Below, in pieces: positions 8,373 to 61,789 of a stretch of DNA of 64,000 bases (within the stretch, counting starts at the first letter, position 1; every line of letters begins with the position of its first letter). Position numbers and translations under genes: made by a program. Source of the stretch: Dicyema japonicum (taxonomy: Eukaryota; Animalia; Dicyemida); NCBI GenBank assembly GCA_011109175.1, contig RDEW01000046.1:347317-411316 (forward strand), given 5' to 3'. The notes below the pieces were generated by a model, which worked only from the letters and a program-made list of their open reading frames with translations, had not been told where the DNA came from and searched no databases.

Positions 8373-10830
8373 ATTATTATTATTATTTAAAGCACTCCCG
8401 AGAAGTCATAAAATTAATCAAGCCTCCCTTGTGCCGTATTTCTAGCCATCCTCTCTATCAGCCTTTTCCAGGACCCTCTACTTCGTGCCAGTTCACTTAA
8501 GGTATCTAGGTCGTCTGCGGAAGTGAGCTTCAGTCCCACAGCCGACAGGTCTCCATTCAAAATAGTTGGGAGTGTGACTCTTGGTCTTCCACGGAAACCG
8601 GCTCCCGTATGCATTAAGTAGTTTTCCATGGCGATATTCGCGGGTACTTGAGCATTTAGACGTAAGATATGTCCAAAGAGACTCCATCTTGATCTGAAGA
8701 TCTCCTCGGATAGTATACCAGATTTGCACTTCGAGTAGAGGTCATTGTTTGAGATCTTCTTAGGCCACTTGATCTTGATTACTGATTTCAATTGTGTCCT
8801 GTGGAAAGCGTCAAGACGGTCCATCTCTTGTTTAGAGATTCCCCAAGTGCCTGAATTGTAGGTCAGGACGGGGATGACAAAAGCCTTATATATTCTGAGT
8901 TTGGTGTTTAATCCCATCCTCTTCTTATGACCCCACATATTCGATACTTTCTTTAGTGCACACATTGCGAGGATTTTCCTCCGAGAAACATCTTCTGAGT
9001 CCCCGAGAAGCGAACCCACCTTCTTTTGCTTTCTCCAAGACTCGTCCGATCTTCGATCATTGCGTGTAAGTGTTGTGAACTCTGTTTTATCGGTGTTAAC
9101 GGTTAAGAACCATTTCGAGAATACGTGTGGAAGAACGTTAAGCATGTGTTGAAGTACTTGAATATCCTCAGAAACAAAGTCCAGGTCGTCCGCGTAGATT
9201 ATCTCGTTATAATTGTTGCCAACCAGGGGTCTGAACTCTCTTAGTGCGGCCTCAAGGTAGACAATAAAGAGGACCGGGGATAGTGAGTCCCCCTGTGGAA
9301 CTCCACGTGAGGTCGAAAAAAAGTTAGAGGTAGAGTCACCAATTTTGACGGCAAGTTGAGTGTTCCGCATGAGTAAGTGTATTATTTTGACATCGTCAGG
9401 CAGTAGAAAACTCTCCAACACTTCCATAAGTTTTCCACGGTCCACCGAGTCGAACGCACGGGACATGTCGATACCAAGTATCTCAATAGATTTTTTGTAT
9501 ATTTTGGCACAGGGCACAATACCACCTGTGCCCCCATACCACGTCAGCCGTGGACCTGCCCGTCCGGAATCCACTTTGGCCGTCCGAAAGAAATATGTTC
9601 ACCCTCTCCTTTATTCGGTTTAAAGCAATGAGGGATAATGTTTTTCGTATGGAGGTTAGGAGTATAATAGGTCTGAAGTTGTGAGGGGGGCCTTTACTTT
9701 TTCCCGGTTTTTGTAGTGGAATTAGCCACCCTTTTCCCAGTTCCAGTTCATCTGCACCCTCGAGAGACCGGTTGAAAATGTTAGTAATCATTTCAATTAG
9801 CTCCTCCGGGCCGTATTGTAAAAGTTCTGCAGTAATGAAGTCTGGTCCGGCAGATCTTCCGGTATTTAATTTTTTAATAGCTTGTTGAGTTTCGGATATG
9901 GTAATAGGGCTAGTTAGAGTGTACTTGTAAGACTTCCGAGATTTCATTGCTTGGTCAGCCGCGTCCTGTTTGTTGAACATAAGGTCAAAATGGGATGCCA
10001 GAACGTTTGCTTTGTTAATGGTCCCGATAACGTCGTGACCAAGGTTGTCATGGACAGTTAACGAAATTGGACAGTTTTCTCTGCTAAGAAGCCGGATTGC
10101 TTTGAACATTCTTGGTCCGTTCTTGTACTTTAATATGTCTGAGATTTTCTCCTCAGCTTCATTTTTGGCAAGGAATCTTTGTATTTGTTTGATCTTCGTT
10201 AAGACTCTCCCTCTCTGGGTGCGCAGTACTTTGATATCTTCCGGAGCGTTTGTGTTTTCCATCCGGAGTCTGAGCTCTTTCTGTGTTACAGAGAGTTGTC
10301 CGATATCCGGATTACATTGTTTGTGACGAGATTTGGTGATGTGACCAAGCACACTAAAGGCTGTGTTTTGGATAGCAACCACTATTTCATCCCATAAGCT
10401 GTTTGTCGGCTGATTTTGGTTAATACTGTTGATGCTATCTCTCAGAACTGCACTATAACGACATTTGGTGGATTCTTCGTAGCGTAACCTCTCAGTGTCG
10501 AAACGTACTGAGGTAAGGCCTTTGTGTTTCCCGTGTATTCCATGGATTCTTTTAAGTACTAGCCGGGCGACCACAAGTTTATGATCGCTACTTGTTTCAA
10601 GTCCACCGTAAGATCTCGAGTCCTGTAGGAGGGCCTTCTGATGTTGCTTGCAGATAATATAGTCGATCTGATTGTATATATTGACTGTGTTTCCAGATTT
10701 GCCTTTTCTGGTACCAACCCACGTGGTCCTGTGTCTTGCCGGGTGCTTGAAACAAGTGTTGCATATGAGTAGGTTGAATGCCGTGCAAAATTGTATTAAT
10801 GCCTCTCCGGGGATGTTACGGCGGTTTCTA
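8373..10830 (-). mobile_element. Young 5'-truncated RTE-like LINE (APE C-terminus plus RT)
   Basis: Open frames 9483-10830 and 8414-9574 are joined by one frameshift near 9490-9510. Motifs QIDYII, SDHKLV, GPDFI, FRPIILL, GIDMSRAFDSV, GVPQGDSLSP and YADD are present. (TAA)n tail at 8373-8387, and a 29-bp TSD. Confidence 0.93.
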
Positions 10831-10859
10831 CTAAATCCGTTGGTGAGAGGATTTACAGT

Positions 10860-11200
10860 TAACAAAAATTTCAAAGGAAAATATTGAGAAACATCTTCCC
10901 CTATGAGGCCGGGAAACCTCACCTTCAAGACGTCACCTTCACCGACACATTGGCCCCTTCCAACCTACACCAGAGTTTCTCTGGAGCCTGTTCTGCCGCT
11001 AGAAGGCCGAGAGGTCAAAGTATGAGGTACTACCAGAGGATTTTCTACCGCGATTGAAACTTTTGGTTTCCTTGAGTCTTCTCTGCACAAACAGGAGATC
11101 TCCGTGGGCACTGTTTGCTATTTGAGCGAATCTCCTTCGCCATCATGAGAGGTAATAGCCACACGATCAGGGCTGCCGCTATATGACCTTTTTGTTTATT
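10860..11200 (-). mobile_element. CRE-like element copy A, 5' part
   Basis: Continuous with 7850-8343 once the RTE and one TSD are removed. 11110-11190 is homologous to 33360-33450 of CRE copy D (GCCGCTATATGACC block). Confidence 0.6.
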
Positions 11201-37959: not shown

Positions 37960-39063
37960 TTATTAACCCAAGAACACCAATAGTTTATTTAATTACTAAA
38001 TTAATTAAGTGATCTCGAAGGCCTCAATCAGAATTCTCATTTTCTCCTCGTGCGCCTTCTGGGATCCAACACAACTTCTCTGTGGGCGAGGTGGTTTCGG
38101 GAATAGGAATTAGAGAGGGGTGATGTACACCCTTTTCATAAGACATGTGGTGACTGTGTATTGTTGTGAGTTGTACTGCTTGCACAGGGTAGCAAATCCT
38201 TTTCCATTTTGTCAGATAAGGTCTTCAAGTGATGAGGGTAATAGTTTTTCTAGTTTCCCGAGATTACTAATAGTAGTGGCTGTTAAGGCCTGAATGTCTC
38301 GGATTCTTTGTTTGTTCGTCCAGACAGATTGATTCCCCGTGACGTACAGGCATAGCTGACAGGCTCAATGAATTGTTTGTGCAACAATTTCAAAGCTGGG
38401 AAAGAGGTTTTAATGCCACCGAAAATAGTTTTGATTATCCCTAGCTTTCTTGAGCAGCTTCCAGAGACAGTGTCGACGTGAGATGAAAAGGACATGTGTG
38501 TGTCGAGGTGATCCCAAGATTTACAGTTTCTTCGTGAAAGGTATTTTTGTCTGGTTGATAAATATATCCACTGTCATTTGCCCAAGTCGTTTGTCTGAGG
38601 TAAATAAGGAAGAAGATTTTTCAGTAGATATATAAAGCCGGTTATAATTTAGCCAAATTTGAATCTTGTGAAGGTATTCTTGTAGTCTTTCTGATGCCTT
38701 TGGAATATCTTGGTCACGGGATGTGATTAATAAGTCATCAGCATATGATAGGATGAAATCGTCTTTATTATCGGGTTGCGGTAAATCGGACATGTATAAG
38801 TTAAATAAGGCGTGTGATAAAGGGGAACCTTGTGGGACACCATTGGGTAGTAATCTTGTAATTGATTTGGTCCCATCCATGTATACCCGGACCCTTCTTC
38901 CATTTATGAAGTTAGCAAGCCAAAGTTTTATATTGGGGTTGACGGGGAGAACAAACAATTTCCGGGTTAGGATTTTCCTTGAGACAGAGTCGAAGGCCTT
39001 TTGTAAATCGATCGAACAGACGACTGTTTTGAGGTGACAAGGATTTGTGTTAAAGCTTTCCAT
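37960..39063 (-). mobile_element. LINE RT to 3' end
   Basis: ORF 38521-39063: SIDLQKAFDSV, GVPQGSPLS, YADD. (TAA)n tail near 37960. Confidence 0.85.
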
Positions 39064-49949: not shown

Positions 49950-51600
49950 TGTTGAACCTGCAGAATGATTTAAGGATCTTATCCGAAATTACTGTTGATC
50001 CGCAAACTTTTTCCAAATTGAAACAAGAACGAAGGCAAATCGAGAGGAAATTCAAACTCTTAAACAAGCAACATCACACCACTTAGTTCGAAAACAAGAT
50101 TAAAGAGGTCGAACGCCTTAAAAATAACCCTGACATTTCTGGCTATAGACTAATGAAGAGAAACCAATCAAGGAAGCTTCTTTTGGACGGCAGAAATGAA
50201 AAAAAAACAATTAGAAATTCTACCGAACAGGCAGAGTTCGTCGCATCGCACTTTGAACAACTGTGAAAGGAGAGAATCGGACTTCACGCCAGAGGATAGC
50301 GATTCGAACGGTTCATCTCACCAAAGGAAGTCTCCAGAGCGATAAAGAAGCTCAAATTTAGTCGCTCTCCGGGACCATACAACATATCCTTAGAATTGTT
50401 AAAATTAGGCCCAGCATAACTTGCAGAGAAACTCTCAAATTGCTGAATGATATGATAGCTAACAAGAATTTTTCAGAGCTTGGAAAATGGGTACTAATAC
50501 CTGTCCAAAACGCAGATAAACCCACCGGACTTGTTGAAAACTTGCGTCCTGTCATTTTTCTAATTACCCTGCGGAAAATCCTAGTCCTGATCGTACTTAA
50601 TCGGATCCAAGAATCAGTGGACGGGAACTTGGATCATAGCCAAAGTGGTTTCAAAACTGGGAGATCAACAGCTAATGAAGTATGGTGCCATAGGTGGCAT
50701 TGTTCAAGGACTATTATTGGAATTAATCTCACCAGAGCATTCGATACTTTTATTAAAGTGCTGGAAAGTTTCCTGGACTCGGTCACCTTAATACGGATAC
50801 TCCTATCAAAAAAAGTGTTGCGAGTGTGTATTGGAAACTGTATGTCGTGAGAAATCGTGACAATAGTAAGCACACTTCAAGGAGATTCCCTCTCTCCGGT
50901 ATTGTCGCTTTATATCTTTAATCTGTTCTGAGATTTCCGGAAGTATTACAGCGACGATATTATGGAAATTGTTTAAGCCGATAATGGAACGCCACGAATA
51001 CGGATATTGTCGAGATCAACGGATGGAACCACGAATACCGAAAACTGGAGGAAGACCACAAAACTTGACTCTCTTCTTGGAACTCCAAAGACATTGCCAG
51101 AAGGAAATTGTTATCTACGGTGACCATATAAAAGCTTTTGAAAGGATGGCTCTCAAGGCGTCCAGCCTACCCATCAATCTGACTCAGATTATATGAGGCT
51201 TTCGTGAAACTGATCCTTGCGTATAACTCTGGAATTCTGGGAATCTCGAAAACCGACGGGAAAAGGCTCGACTTCTTTCATAATAATCAATTTCGATATC
51301 TCTTGGGATTAAAGTTGCCAATGCGTGTAAGGAGTGAAGCATTTTACAAAGGATACTCTCTGGACTTGTGACCATCTTGATCACGAAGATGCACTGGAAA
51401 CTGTTTGGTCACATTGGGGAGAATTCCCAGAGGAGGGTGGAAGCTCATCCTTGAGCTGTTCAATGCGAAAAGTATAAGTTTGTGCGAACTGAAAAACGTT
51501 AACAAATTTGTTAGGCAACATTGCAACGGTGGTATCTGAATCACCATATGGATGCTCGAATTCGTTTAACCTAAGAGAAGGATTTATTTAGAACCCCGGA
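49950..51600 (+). mobile_element. Degenerate RTE-like LINE remnant
   Basis: NLRPVIFL, QSGFKTGRSTA..VWCHRW, GINLTRAFD and HWKLFGHI, as in the 8373-10830 family. Confidence 0.75.
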
Positions 51601-59049: not shown

Positions 59050-59660
59050 TCAGATTATTATTAAAACACATCAACCAGGTGTGTGACTGGCTATCCATGA
59101 ATTTGCTGTCTGTGTCTGCATCCAAGTCTCAGTTCACGCAATTTATTACAGACAGAAGATTTAAAGGTGGACTTGAGATTTTCCTCGGAAACATTCCCAT
59201 TCTTTATACACGAATCCAGAAAATCCTTGGAGTAACTTTCGACTCTCTGATGACGTTCGCCAGTCACACGGAGGAGGTGTTAACCAAGGGTCTTCGAAAA
59301 TAGAACGTCCTAAAAGCCATCGTAAAGAAGAGCCCCTTCCCTCCTACTGCTTGTATCAGCAAAGTATATCTCTTAGAGGAGGCGACAGTGAGACATGGCT
59401 TGGGCTTCCTACGTATGTGCAATGAGCTAGGAAACCCATTCAGAGAGAGGGTGGTTCATGCGGAGGAATTCAGATCGGCATTAAAAAAGTGCACTCCGAT
59501 AGAATTCCTTTGCAGAAATAAAAGAAGACACTTCAGAAACGCTGTTGGTTCACTGGCGGAGCATTCGAAAAGAATTCGAGAGATCTTGGAAGCTGGGATC
59601 ACTTAATTTATCAAGTTAATTATTTCTTGGTTGTCTCGGGGTTTTAAAAAAATAAAATAA
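59050..59660 (+). mobile_element. LINE 3' fragment
   Basis: QKILGVTFDSLMTFASH, GGGATCAC 3' motif and an A-rich tail. Confidence 0.75.
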
Positions 59661-59876
59661 AACTACCCACCTTACTTGTTGACAAAATTCATCAAGGAAA
59701 ACCTTCAACGCAAACCTCGGCATCAAAAGACCATTTTGTGTTCCATTGACATACAGAAGGCTTTTGACTCAATACCGAGGAAACTGCTCACTAAGAAGAT
59801 TAATGGCTCTAACATTCTGAATAACCTGAAAATTTGGCTTGCTAATTTCCTCAACGGAAGAAGAGGAAGAGTAATA

Positions 59877-61597
59877 TGTCACATGGGCGGCGCGTAACGC
59901 ATGGGCAGCCTGTTACATTTTTTCGACCTTGAAAAGGTCTTTTGATTATCCGACATTATTATTATTACCCCAGGATCACTGGGTCAAAAAGAAAGAAATA
60001 AAAGTTCTCATCTAACTAAGTGATCCCAGACCGACAAAGATGAAATAGAGTCCTCATTGGATTATCCGACATTTAATTTTATATATCCGATTTATATCGT
60101 GATTTAATCCTGTTAAATTAGTTTTTTATTCATAAATGTTATGATTATAAAGATTTTATTTTTTATAGCGGTAAACCTAGATTTCTAGCGTGATTTATAG
60201 CATGGAAGATTATTTTGTTGCAATGGCTTCTTACAAGGGTTTTGTGAAAGATTGAGTTGAATATCAAACTTTGAAAGATGCTTTGCATGATAAATTTCCC
60301 GAAAATCTTCCGAGGCATTGAAAATATAGGCTTGTAAAGAAGATAGAGAATTTTTCTATTATCAATGACAGGTATTGTAAATTGCAATAATTTTAGACTG
60401 TATCTTATATCAACTGATTCCAAGTTAGTCATATCCCTGGATAATGAAACCGAAATGGAGCATGTTGCGAAATCGTTGCACGAGTTTTCACACGGAGGAG
60501 TCAATAAAATTGAGTATGAATGTCGACAAAAATACTTCACTGTAAAGAATGAGATTATCAGAAAAGTCATTCGAAATTGTGAAGTCTGTAAATTTTCGCG
60601 TCCTTTAAAAGTTCGTGATTTTTTTAATTGGAGATATAAATCACCATATGTTTGCTTCTTCTCCAAATGAACGTTTTCAGGTAGATCTAATAGACCTGAA
60701 AAAATTTTCAACATTAAATGAAAATTTCAAATGAATTTTAGCGGTCATTGACATATATAGTATGTTGGTTTTTTTTAATTTATAGATTCGCTTTTGTACG
60801 ACCACTCTATAATAATTCTGGTAAAGAAGTATGTGAAAACTTAAGATCTTCGTTCCGCCTGAATGGGCCATGTAAATTTCTTCAGTCGGACAATGGTTCT
60901 GAATTTAAAAATCAAGAAATAACAAAACTTTGCGAAGATTTTAACATTAAGAAAATTCACGGAAGGCCTAACAATTCACGAGCACAAGGACTAAGATAAT
61001 TTAAGTGATGAGTGTGCGATTCCAGAACAAATTGACGATTTGGTTAATTGTTCGACTCCAGAATCTATTGAAAATTCACGTAGTTTGATTTAAAAAAATT
61101 TATATCTAGATAATTCCCAGTCAGATAATTTGTGTCCGAATGCGAAGAGATTCAATTTCGAAATTAAATCGATTGAAGAAAATTCTAATTATTACAAAGC
61201 TATGAACAGGAAAATGAATGTTCATAATAGTAAATATACTTTTAACATGGGAGATAAAGTATGAATTAAAAACATTAATAAATAGGTTCGGGCTAAAAAG
61301 GACTTTGGAACAAATCCCTCATTGCGACTGGATAAGTTTGAGTCTCAGTATTATCCAGTTGCAGAAATAATTAATATTTTATCGAATAATCGCGTGGAGG
61401 TAGTTTTAAATAGTTTAATTTGATAGATAAAAAATTCGAAAGGAGAAATATCGACTGTATTAATGAGTAGACTAAAAAAAGTTACTTAAATTTAATTTTT
61501 TGTGGTTAATAAATCATTTATAAAATTAATTGAAGTTAATCTTGGTTCAAGGTTAATGTAACAGGCTGCCCATAGGTAACGCTTGGCCCATGTGACA
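59877..61597 (+). mobile_element. Complete-ended Ginger-like DNA transposon (retroviral-type integrase) with micro-introns, inactivated
   Basis: 43-bp TIRs starting TGT (59877-59919 and 61555-61597, 37/43 identical) and a 5-bp TSD TAATA. HHCC finger (LHEFSHGG...CEVC), ERFQVDLID...VID and QSDNGSEF...HGRP. Introns at 60372-60396, 61259-61285 and 61400-61426, probably also about 60615-60633 and 60764-60785. Confidence 0.9.
59958..60059 (-). mobile_element. About 100-bp LINE 3'-tail insertion inside the Ginger left arm
   Basis: GGGATCAC motif and (TAA)n tail. 14-bp TSD GATTATCCGACATT at 59944-59957 and 60060-60073. Confidence 0.8.
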
Positions 61598-61789
61598 TAA
61601 TATCCCATTCCACATCCTCAGTCACTAAATTTCTGCCTAAAGGGGTGCCGCAAGGATCCCCTCTCTCCAATTCTCTCCAAACTATTCATTAGCGACATGC
61701 CTTCTACGGTTACGACGATACCCTATTCTTTGCTTACGCCGACGAAAGAGAATTGCAATGATAAATTCCCGATTAAATGAAACTATGGA

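What the first reader, a model, noticed from the sequence alone, without database searches (positions are those of the whole stretch)
59877..61597. Ginger-like integrase transposon broken up by host-style micro-introns
Seen: TGT-starting 43-bp TIRs, a 5-bp TSD, and an integrase (HHCC, D..D35E-type core, SH3-like tail) whose frame only becomes continuous after removing tiny GT-AG introns. Three are clear (25, 27 and 27 nt; each contains an in-frame stop) and two are probable (about 19 and 22 nt). Established: Ginger elements are cut-and-paste transposons related to LTR integrases, and some carry introns. Inference: this lineage has been vertically resident long enough to acquire or shrink introns to the host's miniature size class, so its transposase expression depends on the host micro-intron splicing machinery. 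This copy is dead (in-frame stops and an internal deletion after RAQGL).
Basis: partly seen in the sequence, partly recalled or inferred. Interest (0 to 1): 0.8.

Follow-up and report, generated by a model that had tools for sequence, protein, structure and literature searches.

The report
Ginger-like transposon with seven micro-introns
This is a dead, internally deleted copy of a small cut-and-paste transposon (about 110 copies in what is almost certainly the Dicyema japonicum genome) whose integrase-type transposase gene is split by seven introns of only 23-29 bases, the size of the host's own introns.

Summary
Window 59877-61597 is a 1,721-bp element with 43-bp TGTCA...TGACA inverted ends (37/43 matching) and a 5-bp TAATA duplication. 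It sits in a LINE reverse-transcriptase ORF, and a paralogous LINE copy shows the empty site.

It belongs to a family of about 110 copies, 96-99.6% identical. Full-length copies are about 1.93 kb. The window copy is a non-autonomous derivative with a 210-bp deletion, three premature TGA stops and a lost intron-2 acceptor. At least six copies with different flanks share that deletion.

The full gene has eight exons and seven GT-AG introns, not five. Removing them from one natural copy gives an open 440-aa HHCC + D,D35E integrase. It aligns end to end with intronless relatives, the best being a microsporidian protein at 48.7% identity.

A sister family (76% DNA identity) keeps all seven introns with GT-AG. 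Five of the seven differ in length by amounts not divisible by three, and dN/dS on the spliced frame is 0.14. This is strong indirect evidence of splicing.

No RNA data could be reached, so splicing is not shown directly.

Anatomy fits Ginger2/TDD, not Ginger1, GingerRoot, Polinton or an LTR element. Related families in this genome carry different intron sets or none, which hints at intron turnover. The scan's first readers had already noted this family elsewhere in the genome.

The parts
59872..59876 (.). Left copy of the 5-bp target-site duplication (TAATA)
   Evidence: Empty-site paralogue L052 has a single TAATA.
59877..59919 (+). Left terminal inverted repeat, 43 nt, starts TGTCA
   Evidence: Identical or near-identical in other copies.
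59920..60201 (+). 5' non-coding region of the element
   Evidence: Alignment of copies. The ATG is at 60202.
60202..60371 (+). Exon 1, with private premature stops at 60253 (TGC>TGA) and 60319 (CGA>TGA)
60372..60396 (+). Intron 1, GT-AG, 25 nt here (26 nt in most copies)
60397..60610 (+). Exon 2, holding the HHCC zinc-binding domain (H-x3-H-x28-C-x2-C)
   Evidence: Pfam Integrase_H2C2, E 2.6e-7, on the same exon of L009. Coordinates.
60611..60626 (+). Remnant of intron 2 (24 nt in intact copies). The acceptor AG was removed by an 8-nt deletion that four other copies of the deletion subfamily share (five of six in all).
60627..60763 (+). Exon 3 (first catalytic Asp region). The stop at 60732 (TGG>TGA) is shared by the whole deletion subfamily.
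60764..60785 (+). Intron 3, GT-AG, 22 nt here (20-24 nt among copies; T-run length varies)
60786..60988 (+). Exon 4, truncated. The integrase core runs up to RAQG. The 210-bp deletion follows and removes the catalytic Glu, the rest of the core and most of intron 4.
   Evidence: Pfam rve, E 8.4e-9, on the full exon of L009. Deletion mapped.
60989..60995 (+). Last 7 nt of intron 4 left by the deletion
60996..61079 (+). Exon 5 (variable linker)
61080..61109 (+). Intron 5, GT-AG, 30 nt here (29 nt in most copies).
61110..61258 (+). Exon 6
61259..61285 (+). Intron 6, GT-AG, 27 nt. Its position is shared by families A, B, C and D of the clade.
61286..61399 (+). Exon 7 (C-terminal beta-strand domain)
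   Evidence: Fold of the homologue P0006.
61400..61426 (+). Intron 7, GT-AG, 27 nt
61427..61489 (+). Exon 8, ending in the TAA stop
61490..61554 (+). 3' non-coding region
61555..61597 (-). Right terminal inverted repeat, 43 nt, ends TGACA
61598..61602 (.). Right copy of the TSD (TAATA)
59640..59871 (+). Upstream half of the interrupted LINE-like reverse-transcriptase ORF (a repeat with at least 261 candidate copies)
61603..61760 (+). Downstream half of the interrupted LINE-like RT ORF (...GVPQGSPLSP...)

Best explanation
The window holds a non-autonomous, decayed copy of a 1.93-kb Ginger2/TDD-like cut-and-paste DNA transposon. The host is inferred to be the dicyemid Dicyema japonicum.

Autonomous copies encode one 440-aa integrase-type transposase with four parts: an N-terminal extension, an HHCC zinc domain, a D,D35E RNase-H-fold core and a small beta-strand C-terminal domain.

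By analogy with retroviral and Ty3 integrases and Ginger elements (inferred), the protein binds the 43-bp TGTCA...TGACA ends, excises the element, and inserts it with a 5-bp staggered cut at AT-rich TAWTA-like targets.

The gene is interrupted by seven GT-AG introns of 23-29 nt, the host's own intron size class. Each either shifts the frame or carries an in-frame stop. Transposase production therefore requires host spliceosomal removal of all seven (inferred from comparative evidence, not seen in RNA).

The window copy cannot make transposase because of the 210-bp deletion, three stops and a lost acceptor. Its deletion subfamily nevertheless spread to at least six sites, so it was mobilised in trans.

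The introns were most likely gained inside the dicyemid lineage of this transposon clade rather than inherited and shrunk (about 0.55).
For: **Transposon anatomy**
- TIRs and TSD.
- Empty-site paralogue.
- About 222 TIR cores, so about 110 copies, with 0 hits in the control.
- Full-length copies are 96.3-99.6% identical, median 98.2%.
- Six deletion-subfamily copies share the 210-bp deletion and the TGG>TGA stop. Four of them show intact TSDs at different sites.

**Gene model**
- Removing the seven GT-AG segments from natural copy L009 gives a 1,323-nt open frame of 440 aa. The other 12 full-length copies carry one or more frameshifts or stops each.
- Pfam finds Integrase_H2C2 and rve.
- The spliced protein aligns over residues 12-438 with intronless Dictyocoela proteins (48.7% identity, E 6e-134) and about 15 other ~420-aa proteins. 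There are no gaps at junctions 1, 2, 3, 6 and 7.

**Sister family B (L049, 76% DNA identity)**
- It keeps all seven introns with GT-AG. Lengths are 27/23/27/24/27/28/27 against 26/24/23/28/29/27/27.
- Divergence by codon position is 15%, 12% and 35% (chi-square p 7e-19).
- Position 3 is the most diverged in 8 of 8 exons, and dN/dS is 0.14.

**Host context**
- Host HSP70 has two 26-nt GT-AG introns.
- Published D. japonicum signals are reduced to 'GTa' and 'AG', with very short introns: PMC13644364.
- The assembly size of 67.5 Mb in 377 scaffolds matches PMC6736024.

**Fold**
- The AlphaFold model of the nearest intronless homologue (pLDDT 81) matches PFV, Ty3 and RSV integrases over nearly its whole length (about 450 of 458 alignment columns), and the model ends in four beta strands.

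**Intron origin**
- Groups 2 and 3 in the same genome and all outside relatives are intronless across the N-terminal and core regions.
Against: - No spliced transcript was seen. The only reachable sequencing runs appear to be DNA (the record does not state their kind, and none is on record as RNA) and show no intron-sized joints.
- No Dicyema-derived protein is in the protein database.
- Only 1 of 13 full-length copies examined is open under the model.
- Intron 2 has a weak GTTCGT donor.
- Introns 4 and 5 lie in a poorly conserved linker, so homologue alignment cannot fix their exact borders. The intact frame in L009, GT-AG conservation and the codon-position signal in exons 5 and 6 do support them.
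- Database relatives are ORFs called without introns, which biases the 'outgroups are intronless' argument.
- The host identity rests on matching assembly statistics, not on a named record.
Confidence: 0.85

Rival explanations
1. The ~25-nt inserts are not spliced. The family is a dead, non-autonomous lineage carrying small insertions, moved in trans by an intronless autonomous relative in the same genome.
For: No RNA evidence was obtainable. Most copies are broken. Intronless related families exist in the genome. Trans-mobilisation clearly occurs, as shown by the deletion subfamily.
Against: - dN/dS is 0.14 on exactly the spliced frame between two families that both keep all seven inserts.
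- The codon-phase signal is correct in 8 of 8 exons.
- GT-AG is kept in 14 of 14 inserts, although five of the seven changed length by amounts not divisible by three.
- The spliced ORF is intact in one copy and collinear with homologues.
- The intronless groups have different TIR sequences, so cross-mobilisation is unlikely.
Confidence: 0.07
2. The integrase is a remnant or solo gene of an LTR retrotransposon or retrovirus-like element, or a domesticated host gene, rather than the transposase of a TIR element.
For: Sequence and fold resemble retroviral and Ty3 integrases. Database relatives carry automatic names such as 'Gag-Pol polyprotein'.
Against: - The element has 43-bp inverted, not direct, terminal repeats and is only 1.93 kb with one gene.
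- About 110 copies carry 5-bp TSDs, and a paralogue shows the empty site.
- No RT or RNase H lies inside the element.
- No PF17917 (Gypsy-type RT-RNase H) match appears anywhere in the genome. That search has no positive control.
- The 'Gag-Pol' relatives are 420-460-aa proteins with an rve domain only.
Confidence: 0.02
3. The element and its introns are real, but the introns are ancestral to the transposon lineage. They arrived with it, perhaps longer, and were merely shrunk by the host's genome-wide intron reduction. Intronless relatives lost them.
For: - Intron 6 is shared by families A, B, C and D of the clade.
- An intron at RAQ|GIVERF with similar sequence occurs in two non-sister families. 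That needs either parallel gain or several losses, so precise loss may occur.
- Microsporidian relatives live in intron-poor genomes.
- The database is biased towards intronless ORFs.
Against: - Intron sets differ between sister families. A and B have 7. C, E and F have introns at residue 154 (all three) and 284 (C and F) instead. D is a mix.
- Groups 2 and 3 in the same micro-intron host have none in the N-terminal and core regions.
- There are no alignment gaps at the intron sites, so the introns are net insertions relative to all outgroups.
Confidence: 0.3

Closest known systems
[quoted passage not shown]
   Same: Cut-and-paste element with TIRs ending TGTNR...YNACA, an AT-rich target and a single integrase-like transposase with H2C2 + DDE. 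It lacks YPYY, GPY/F and OTU/Ulp1. The 5-bp TSD matches TDD-4/5. The nearest named animal proteins are 'KRBA2-like' and 'SCAND3-like', which derive from Ginger2 (PMC3575427).
   Different: It is much smaller (1.93 kb against about 2.9-3.8 kb) and its TIRs are shorter (43 bp). Metazoan Ginger2 makes 4-bp TSDs. It has seven 23-29-nt introns. In my tree its clade, together with microsporidian and metagenomic ~420-aa proteins, lies outside the KRBA2-like-named clade. No curated Ginger2/TDD sequence was available for a direct test.
Ginger1 DNA transposons
   Same: Integrase-derived transposase, TGTNR ends, and some families have 1-4 GT-AG introns (PMC2836005).
   Different: Ginger1 makes 4-bp CCGG/CCGT TSDs, has YPYY and GPY/F motifs plus a C-terminal OTU or Ulp1 domain, and is 2.6-7 kb. 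None of these features is present here.
Integrase-only ORFs of microsporidia (Dictyocoela roeselum and D. muelleri, Nosema granulosis), auto-named 'Gag-Pol polyprotein'
   Same: These are the closest sequences found. They are 48-53% identical, collinear over the full length, of the same ~420-460-aa architecture, and sister to the Dicyema clade.
   Different: They are intronless single ORFs. Their TIRs and TSDs were not examined. The hosts are different eukaryotes that parasitise amphipods.
GingerRoot and Polinton/Maverick
   Same: DDE integrase-related enzyme in a DNA element.
   Different: GingerRoot has a 6-bp GC-rich TSD, TA...TA ends and 100-150-bp TIRs (PMC6839031). Polintons have a 6-bp TSD, are far larger and carry a DNA polymerase.
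Retroviral and Ty3/Gypsy integrases (PFV, RSV, HIV, Ty3 structures)
   Same: The domain order NTD(HHCC)-CCD(D,D35E)-CTD matches. Foldseek gives E 2e-20 to the PFV intasome and 1e-14 to Ty3 for the homologue model.
   Different: There is no polyprotein, no RT or RNase H and no LTRs. The enzyme acts on inverted repeats of a DNA element.

Membership tests
Ginger2/TDD | Terminal inverted repeats with TGTNR termini | tested here: met
   TGTCA...TGACA, 43-bp TIRs matching at 37/43. Related families have TGTCG...CGACA.
Ginger2/TDD | Short TSD (5 bp in TDD-4/5, 4 bp in metazoan Ginger2) at AT-rich targets (RTATAY) | tested here: met
   A 5-bp TSD in 21 of 25 copies, mostly TAATA, TATTA or AAATA. Empty site confirmed. 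This matches the TDD length, not the 4 bp reported for animal Ginger2.
Ginger2/TDD | Transposase with H2C2 zinc finger and DDE core, without YPYY, GPY/F, OTU or Ulp1 | tested here: met
   Pfam finds only Integrase_H2C2 and rve. H-x3-H-x28-C-x2-C and D-x35-E are visible in the sequence. No YPYY or GP[YF] motif was seen by inspection of the spliced protein.
Ginger2/TDD | Transposase groups with Ginger2/TDD transposases in a phylogeny | tested here: inconclusive
   No curated Ginger2/TDD sequences were available. Proxies named KRBA2-like or SCAND3-like are 31-33% identical. The Dicyema and microsporidian clade (95*) lies beside, not inside, the KRBA2-like clade, and the root is unknown.
Ginger1 | 4-bp CCGG/CCGT TSD | tested here: not met
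   The TSDs are 5 bp and AT-rich.
Ginger1 | YPYY and GPY/F motifs plus a C-terminal OTU or Ulp1 protease domain | tested here: not met
   Pfam finds no such domain. The protein ends right after the beta-strand CTD. OTU-bearing database relatives are distant.
LTR retrotransposon (Ty3/Gypsy) integrase | LTRs, with adjacent RT and RNase H in a Pol polyprotein | tested here: not met
   The terminal repeats are inverted and the 1.93-kb element has one gene. PF17917 has no match in the genome, but that search has no positive control.
GingerRoot | 6-bp TSD, TA...TA termini, 100-150-bp TIRs | tested here: not met
   The element has a 5-bp TSD, TG...CA termini and 43-bp TIRs. Criteria are from PMC6839031.
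Host-class spliceosomal micro-introns | GT-AG borders and length in the host's class (about 26 nt) | tested here: met
   All 7 introns are GT-AG in family A and all 7 in family B, at 23-29 nt. Host HSP70 introns are 26 nt.
Host-class spliceosomal micro-introns | Removal restores a conserved reading frame that is under purifying selection | tested here: met
   The 440-aa ORF is intact and collinear with intronless homologues. dN/dS is 0.14, and five of the seven introns differ in length by amounts not divisible by three.
Host-class spliceosomal micro-introns | Spliced transcripts exist | not testable with these tools
   Only four runs of unrecorded kind were offered, apparently DNA and none on record as RNA. 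No host-derived proteins are in the database.

The most novel reading that the evidence does not exclude
The Ginger-like families of this dicyemid genome may record recent, repeated gain, and perhaps precise loss, of ~25-nt spliceosomal introns.

- Sister families carry different intron sets. A and B have seven. C, E and F share an intron at residue 154, and C and F also one at 284. D shares some with each.
- Two non-sister families carry a similar intron at the very same site inside the catalytic RAQ|GIVERF motif.
- The microsporidian sister group is intronless throughout, and two other groups in the same genome are intronless over the N-terminal and core regions.

If true, multicopy transposons would give a dated, replicated natural experiment on how ultra-short introns arise in an animal.
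Probability: 0.4. Interest if true: 0.75.

Novelty: new variant of a known kind. Interest (0 to 1): 0.5.

Why it matters
Integrase-derived DNA transposons (Ginger) are few, and up to now were known with at most four ordinary introns. This is a compact, abundant and recently active relative in one of only two animal lineages with introns under 30 nt. Its gene is the most intron-dense of its kind.

It shows that a selfish element can depend on, and be tuned to, an extreme host splicing regime. The differing intron sets among its sister families could make micro-intron origin directly testable.

It also adds the first characterised DNA-transposon family that I could find for a genome whose 49% repeat content was attributed mainly to LINEs.

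Tried and rejected
- **TGA = Trp recoding (ciliate-like code).** I first suspected this from the window's in-frame TGAs. I rejected it because other copies have TGC, CGA and TGG at those codons.
- **RNA evidence.**
  - The look-up of sequencing runs returned four runs of unrecorded kind from one study, apparently DNA and none on record as RNA.
  - Read laying showed no intron-sized joints. It showed only internal-deletion variants and element-less joins of the flanking repeat.
  - Three protein word searches found no host-derived spliced or unspliced protein.
  - Splicing is therefore untested, not refuted.
- **Intron origin by tandem duplication.** No intron resembles its flanking exons more than shuffled versions do.
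- **Within-family polymorphism.** It shows no codon-position bias, as expected for neutral decay after insertion, so it says nothing about selection.
- **Steps not taken.** The large profile search and the complex prediction were not needed.
Full report
**What is in the window**

The stretch 59877-61597 begins TGTCACATGGGC... and ends ...GCCCATGTGACA. The two 43-nt ends are inverted repeats matching at 37 of 43 positions. TAATA lies directly outside both ends.

The flanks translate as two halves of a LINE-type reverse transcriptase (...NGRRGRVI | SHSTSSVTKFLPKGVPQGSPLSP...). A 96%-identical paralogous LINE copy (L052) reads ...GGAAGAG TAATA TCCCATTCC... with a single TAATA. That is exactly the window's flanks joined with one TSD copy. 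So this is a real insertion with a 5-bp target-site duplication.

**The family**

- A search of the window's own genome (67,542,437 bases in 377 contigs) found many copies at 91-100% identity.
- Most full-length copies carry about 206-210 extra bases between query positions 1113 and 1114. The window copy is therefore an internal-deletion derivative, and full-length copies are about 1.93 kb.
- Of 25 copies with both ends, 21 have a perfect 5-bp TSD, mostly TAATA, TATTA or AAATA.
- A 20-nt TIR-core pattern occurs 222 times, against 0 for the control, so there are about 110 elements.
- Thirteen full-length copies are 96.3-99.6% identical pairwise, median 98.2%. The family is young.
- Six copies (L001-L006) share the window's 210-bp deletion and a TGG>TGA stop. 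Five share an 8-nt deletion that removes the intron-2 acceptor. Four of the six show intact TSDs at different sites. This deletion derivative was therefore mobilised in trans after it arose.
- Two further stops, at 60253 and 60319, are private to the window copy.

**Genetic code and host**

The window's in-frame TGAs first suggested TGA = Trp. Other copies have TGC, CGA and TGG at those codons, so the code is standard.

The assembly size and scaffold number equal those published for Dicyema japonicum: 67.5 Mb, 377 scaffolds, 49% repeats, many LINEs, mean intron 38 bp (PMC6736024). This identification is an inference, because the run records are coded.

A host HSP70 gene has two 26-nt GT-AG introns. 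A 2026 paper reports that D. japonicum is the only non-myxozoan animal found with introns this short, with splice signals reduced to 'GTa' and 'AG' (PMC13644364).

**Gene model**

Aligning 13 full-length copies gives eight exons and seven GT-AG introns. In copy L009 the introns are 26, 24, 23, 28, 29, 27 and 27 nt.

- Each intron either shifts the frame (1, 3, 4, 5) or carries in-frame stops (2, 6, 7).
- Removing them from L009, unchanged otherwise, gives a 1,323-nt open frame of 440 aa.
- The other 12 copies have one or more frameshifts or stops each.
- Pfam finds Integrase_H2C2 on exon 2 (E 2.6e-7) and rve on exon 4 (E 8.4e-9).
- The sequence shows H-x3-H-x28-C-x2-C and D...D-x35-E.

Its '19-nt' intron is the damaged intron 2. 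Intron 5 (61080-61109) was missed. Intron 4 is lost in the deletion.

**Are the introns real?**

No RNA could be examined. The only runs offered are of unrecorded kind, apparently genomic DNA (Nextera adapter sequence among the reads), and show no intron-sized joints. No host-derived protein is in the protein collection.

The comparative evidence is strong, however.

1. *Collinearity with intronless relatives.* The spliced protein aligns over residues 12-438 with intronless proteins from other organisms. These include Dictyocoela roeselum (48.7% identity, E 6e-134), D. muelleri, Nosema granulosis and about a dozen unnamed ~420-aa proteins. There is no gap at junctions 1, 2, 3, 6 and 7. Introns 4 and 5 lie in a variable linker.
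2. *A sister family keeps the introns.*
   - Family B (L049, TIRs TGTGACATGGGC..., TSD TATTA) is 76% identical in DNA.
   - It has all seven introns at the same places with GT-AG intact.
   - Its intron lengths are 27/23/27/24/27/28/27 nt, so five of seven differ from family A by amounts not divisible by three.
   - The frame survives only if these segments are removed before translation.
3. *Selection on the spliced frame.*
   - A-B divergence is 15.4%, 11.8% and 35.4% at codon positions 1, 2 and 3 of the spliced frame (chi-square p 7e-19).
   - Position 3 is the most diverged in 8 of 8 exons.
   - dN/dS is 0.14 with dS about 1.0.
   - Introns diverge 24% and non-coding flanks 31%.

The spliced frame has therefore been under purifying selection for a long time while carrying the introns.

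**Classification**

The diagnostics come from Bao et al. 2010 (PMC2836005) and Cerbin et al. 2019 (PMC6839031).

| Kind | Diagnostic features | Fit here |
|---|---|---|
| Ginger1 | 4-bp CCGG TSD, YPYY and GPY/F motifs, OTU/Ulp1 tail | None present |
| Ginger2/TDD | TGTNR ends, AT-rich target, H2C2 + DDE only, 5-bp TSD in TDD-4/5 (4 bp in animals) | All fit, with the TDD-type TSD |
| GingerRoot | 6-bp TSD, TA...TA ends | Does not fit |
| Polinton | 6-bp TSD, much larger | Does not fit |

There is no RT or RNase H in the element. PF17917 finds nothing in the genome, though that search has no positive control.

Named database relatives are 'KRBA2-like' and 'SCAND3-like' proteins at 31-33% identity. 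Those genes derive from Ginger2 (PMC3575427, abstract).

In a quick maximum-likelihood tree of 87 rows:
- The window family sits in a starred clade of nine Dicyema rows (99*), which is sister to the two Dictyocoela proteins (99*).
- That pair lies inside a 62-row clade (95*) of ~420-aa integrase-only proteins.
- The 62-row clade stands beside, not within, the KRBA2-like-named clade.

Without curated Ginger2/TDD sequences, phylogenetic membership is inconclusive. By anatomy it is Ginger2/TDD-like.

An AlphaFold model of the nearest intronless homologue (P0006, pLDDT 81) matches PFV, Ty3, RSV and HIV integrases over nearly its whole length (about 450 of 458 alignment columns) and ends in four beta strands. 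This supports the 'SH3-like tail' by proxy.

**Related families and intron turnover (partly followed)**

The integrase core exon has at least 771 candidate matches in the genome, at 42-100% identity. Sixteen diverged loci were fetched.

| Group | Loci | Introns found |
|---|---|---|
| Clade 1, families A and B | window family, L049 | Seven |
| Clade 1, family D | L046 | Introns 1, 2 and 6, plus one at RAQ\|GIVERF |
| Clade 1, families C, E, F | L036, L045, L039, L035, L037, L038 | Lack introns 1, 2, 3 and 7 where covered. Residue 154 in all three families, 284 in C and F. Intron 6 confirmed in C only. |
| Groups 2 and 3 | L040-L044, L047, L050 | None across the N-terminal and core regions |

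- Only L045 and L039 among the C, E and F loci also have a 27-nt intron at RAQ|GIVERF. Its sequence resembles the one in family D.
- Families C and group 3 also have TGTCG...CGACA ends and 5-bp TSDs.
- No intron resembles its flanking exons, so tandem duplication is not supported as the origin.

This pattern favours intron gain within the dicyemid lineage, perhaps with occasional precise loss. It rests on single, often decayed copies.

**Earlier scan notes**

Two first-reader notes on other pieces of the same genome describe the same kind of element. One says 'seven ultra-short introns' and the other 'cleanly deleted catalytic core'. They agree with what I found independently.

**Verdict**

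- This is a new Ginger2/TDD-like variant with an unusually intron-dense, host-tuned gene.
- Splicing is strongly inferred but not observed.
- The window copy itself is an ordinary dead, non-autonomous copy.

Noticed in passing
window 8414-10928 (-), 38521-39063 (-), 50440-50850 (+): The window is largely LINE-like debris. Several ORFs hit Pfam RVT_1 (E down to 2e-24). The LINE interrupted by the element has at least 261 candidate copies in the genome.
   Followed up: partly
L045:3237-3290, L039:3191-3244, L046:3283-3333, versus L036:3282-3308 (- strand): A 24-27-nt GT-AG intron sits inside the catalytic RAQ|GIVERF motif in two non-sister families, with similar sequence (GTATACAA...TTTTTAG). 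It is absent from the families between them on the tree. This needs either parallel gain at one site, several precise losses, or recombination between families.
   Followed up: partly
L044:1841-4789; L045:2356-4339: Other integrase families of the genome are also TIR elements with TGTCG...CGACA ends and 5-bp TSDs (GTAAT, TATTA). One is 2.95 kb with TIRs of about 110 nt (the repeat tool scored 94 nt of them) and an N-terminal and core region without introns.
   Followed up: partly
P0006, P0086, P0088, P0005 (database proteins): The closest relatives (48-53% identity) are integrase-only ORFs of amphipod-infecting microsporidia (Dictyocoela, Nosema granulosis), auto-annotated as 'Gag-Pol polyprotein'. 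They look like the same kind of DNA transposon, mis-named. Two unrelated parasite lineages share this clade.
   Followed up: partly
L025, L027, L028, L029, L030 (elements of 1.28-1.47 kb): There are further, shorter internal-deletion derivatives of the same family, mostly with perfect TSDs. Family C also has many such derivatives.
   Followed up: no
L009:1494-3480 (read joints): Contigs from three of the four runs join the flanks of this copy without the element (skip of 1,985 nt). The flanks are themselves repeated, so this may be paralogous empty sites rather than an insertion polymorphism.
   Followed up: no
L046:1252-3094: In the one family-D copy, the two halves of the gene are separated by about 1.8 kb at or near the intron-3 position, probably a nested insertion.
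   Followed up: no
whole genome G000: There is no match to the Gypsy/BEL-type RT-RNase H connection domain (PF17917) anywhere in the genome. The search had no positive control, so absence of Ty3/Gypsy elements is only suggested.
   Followed up: no
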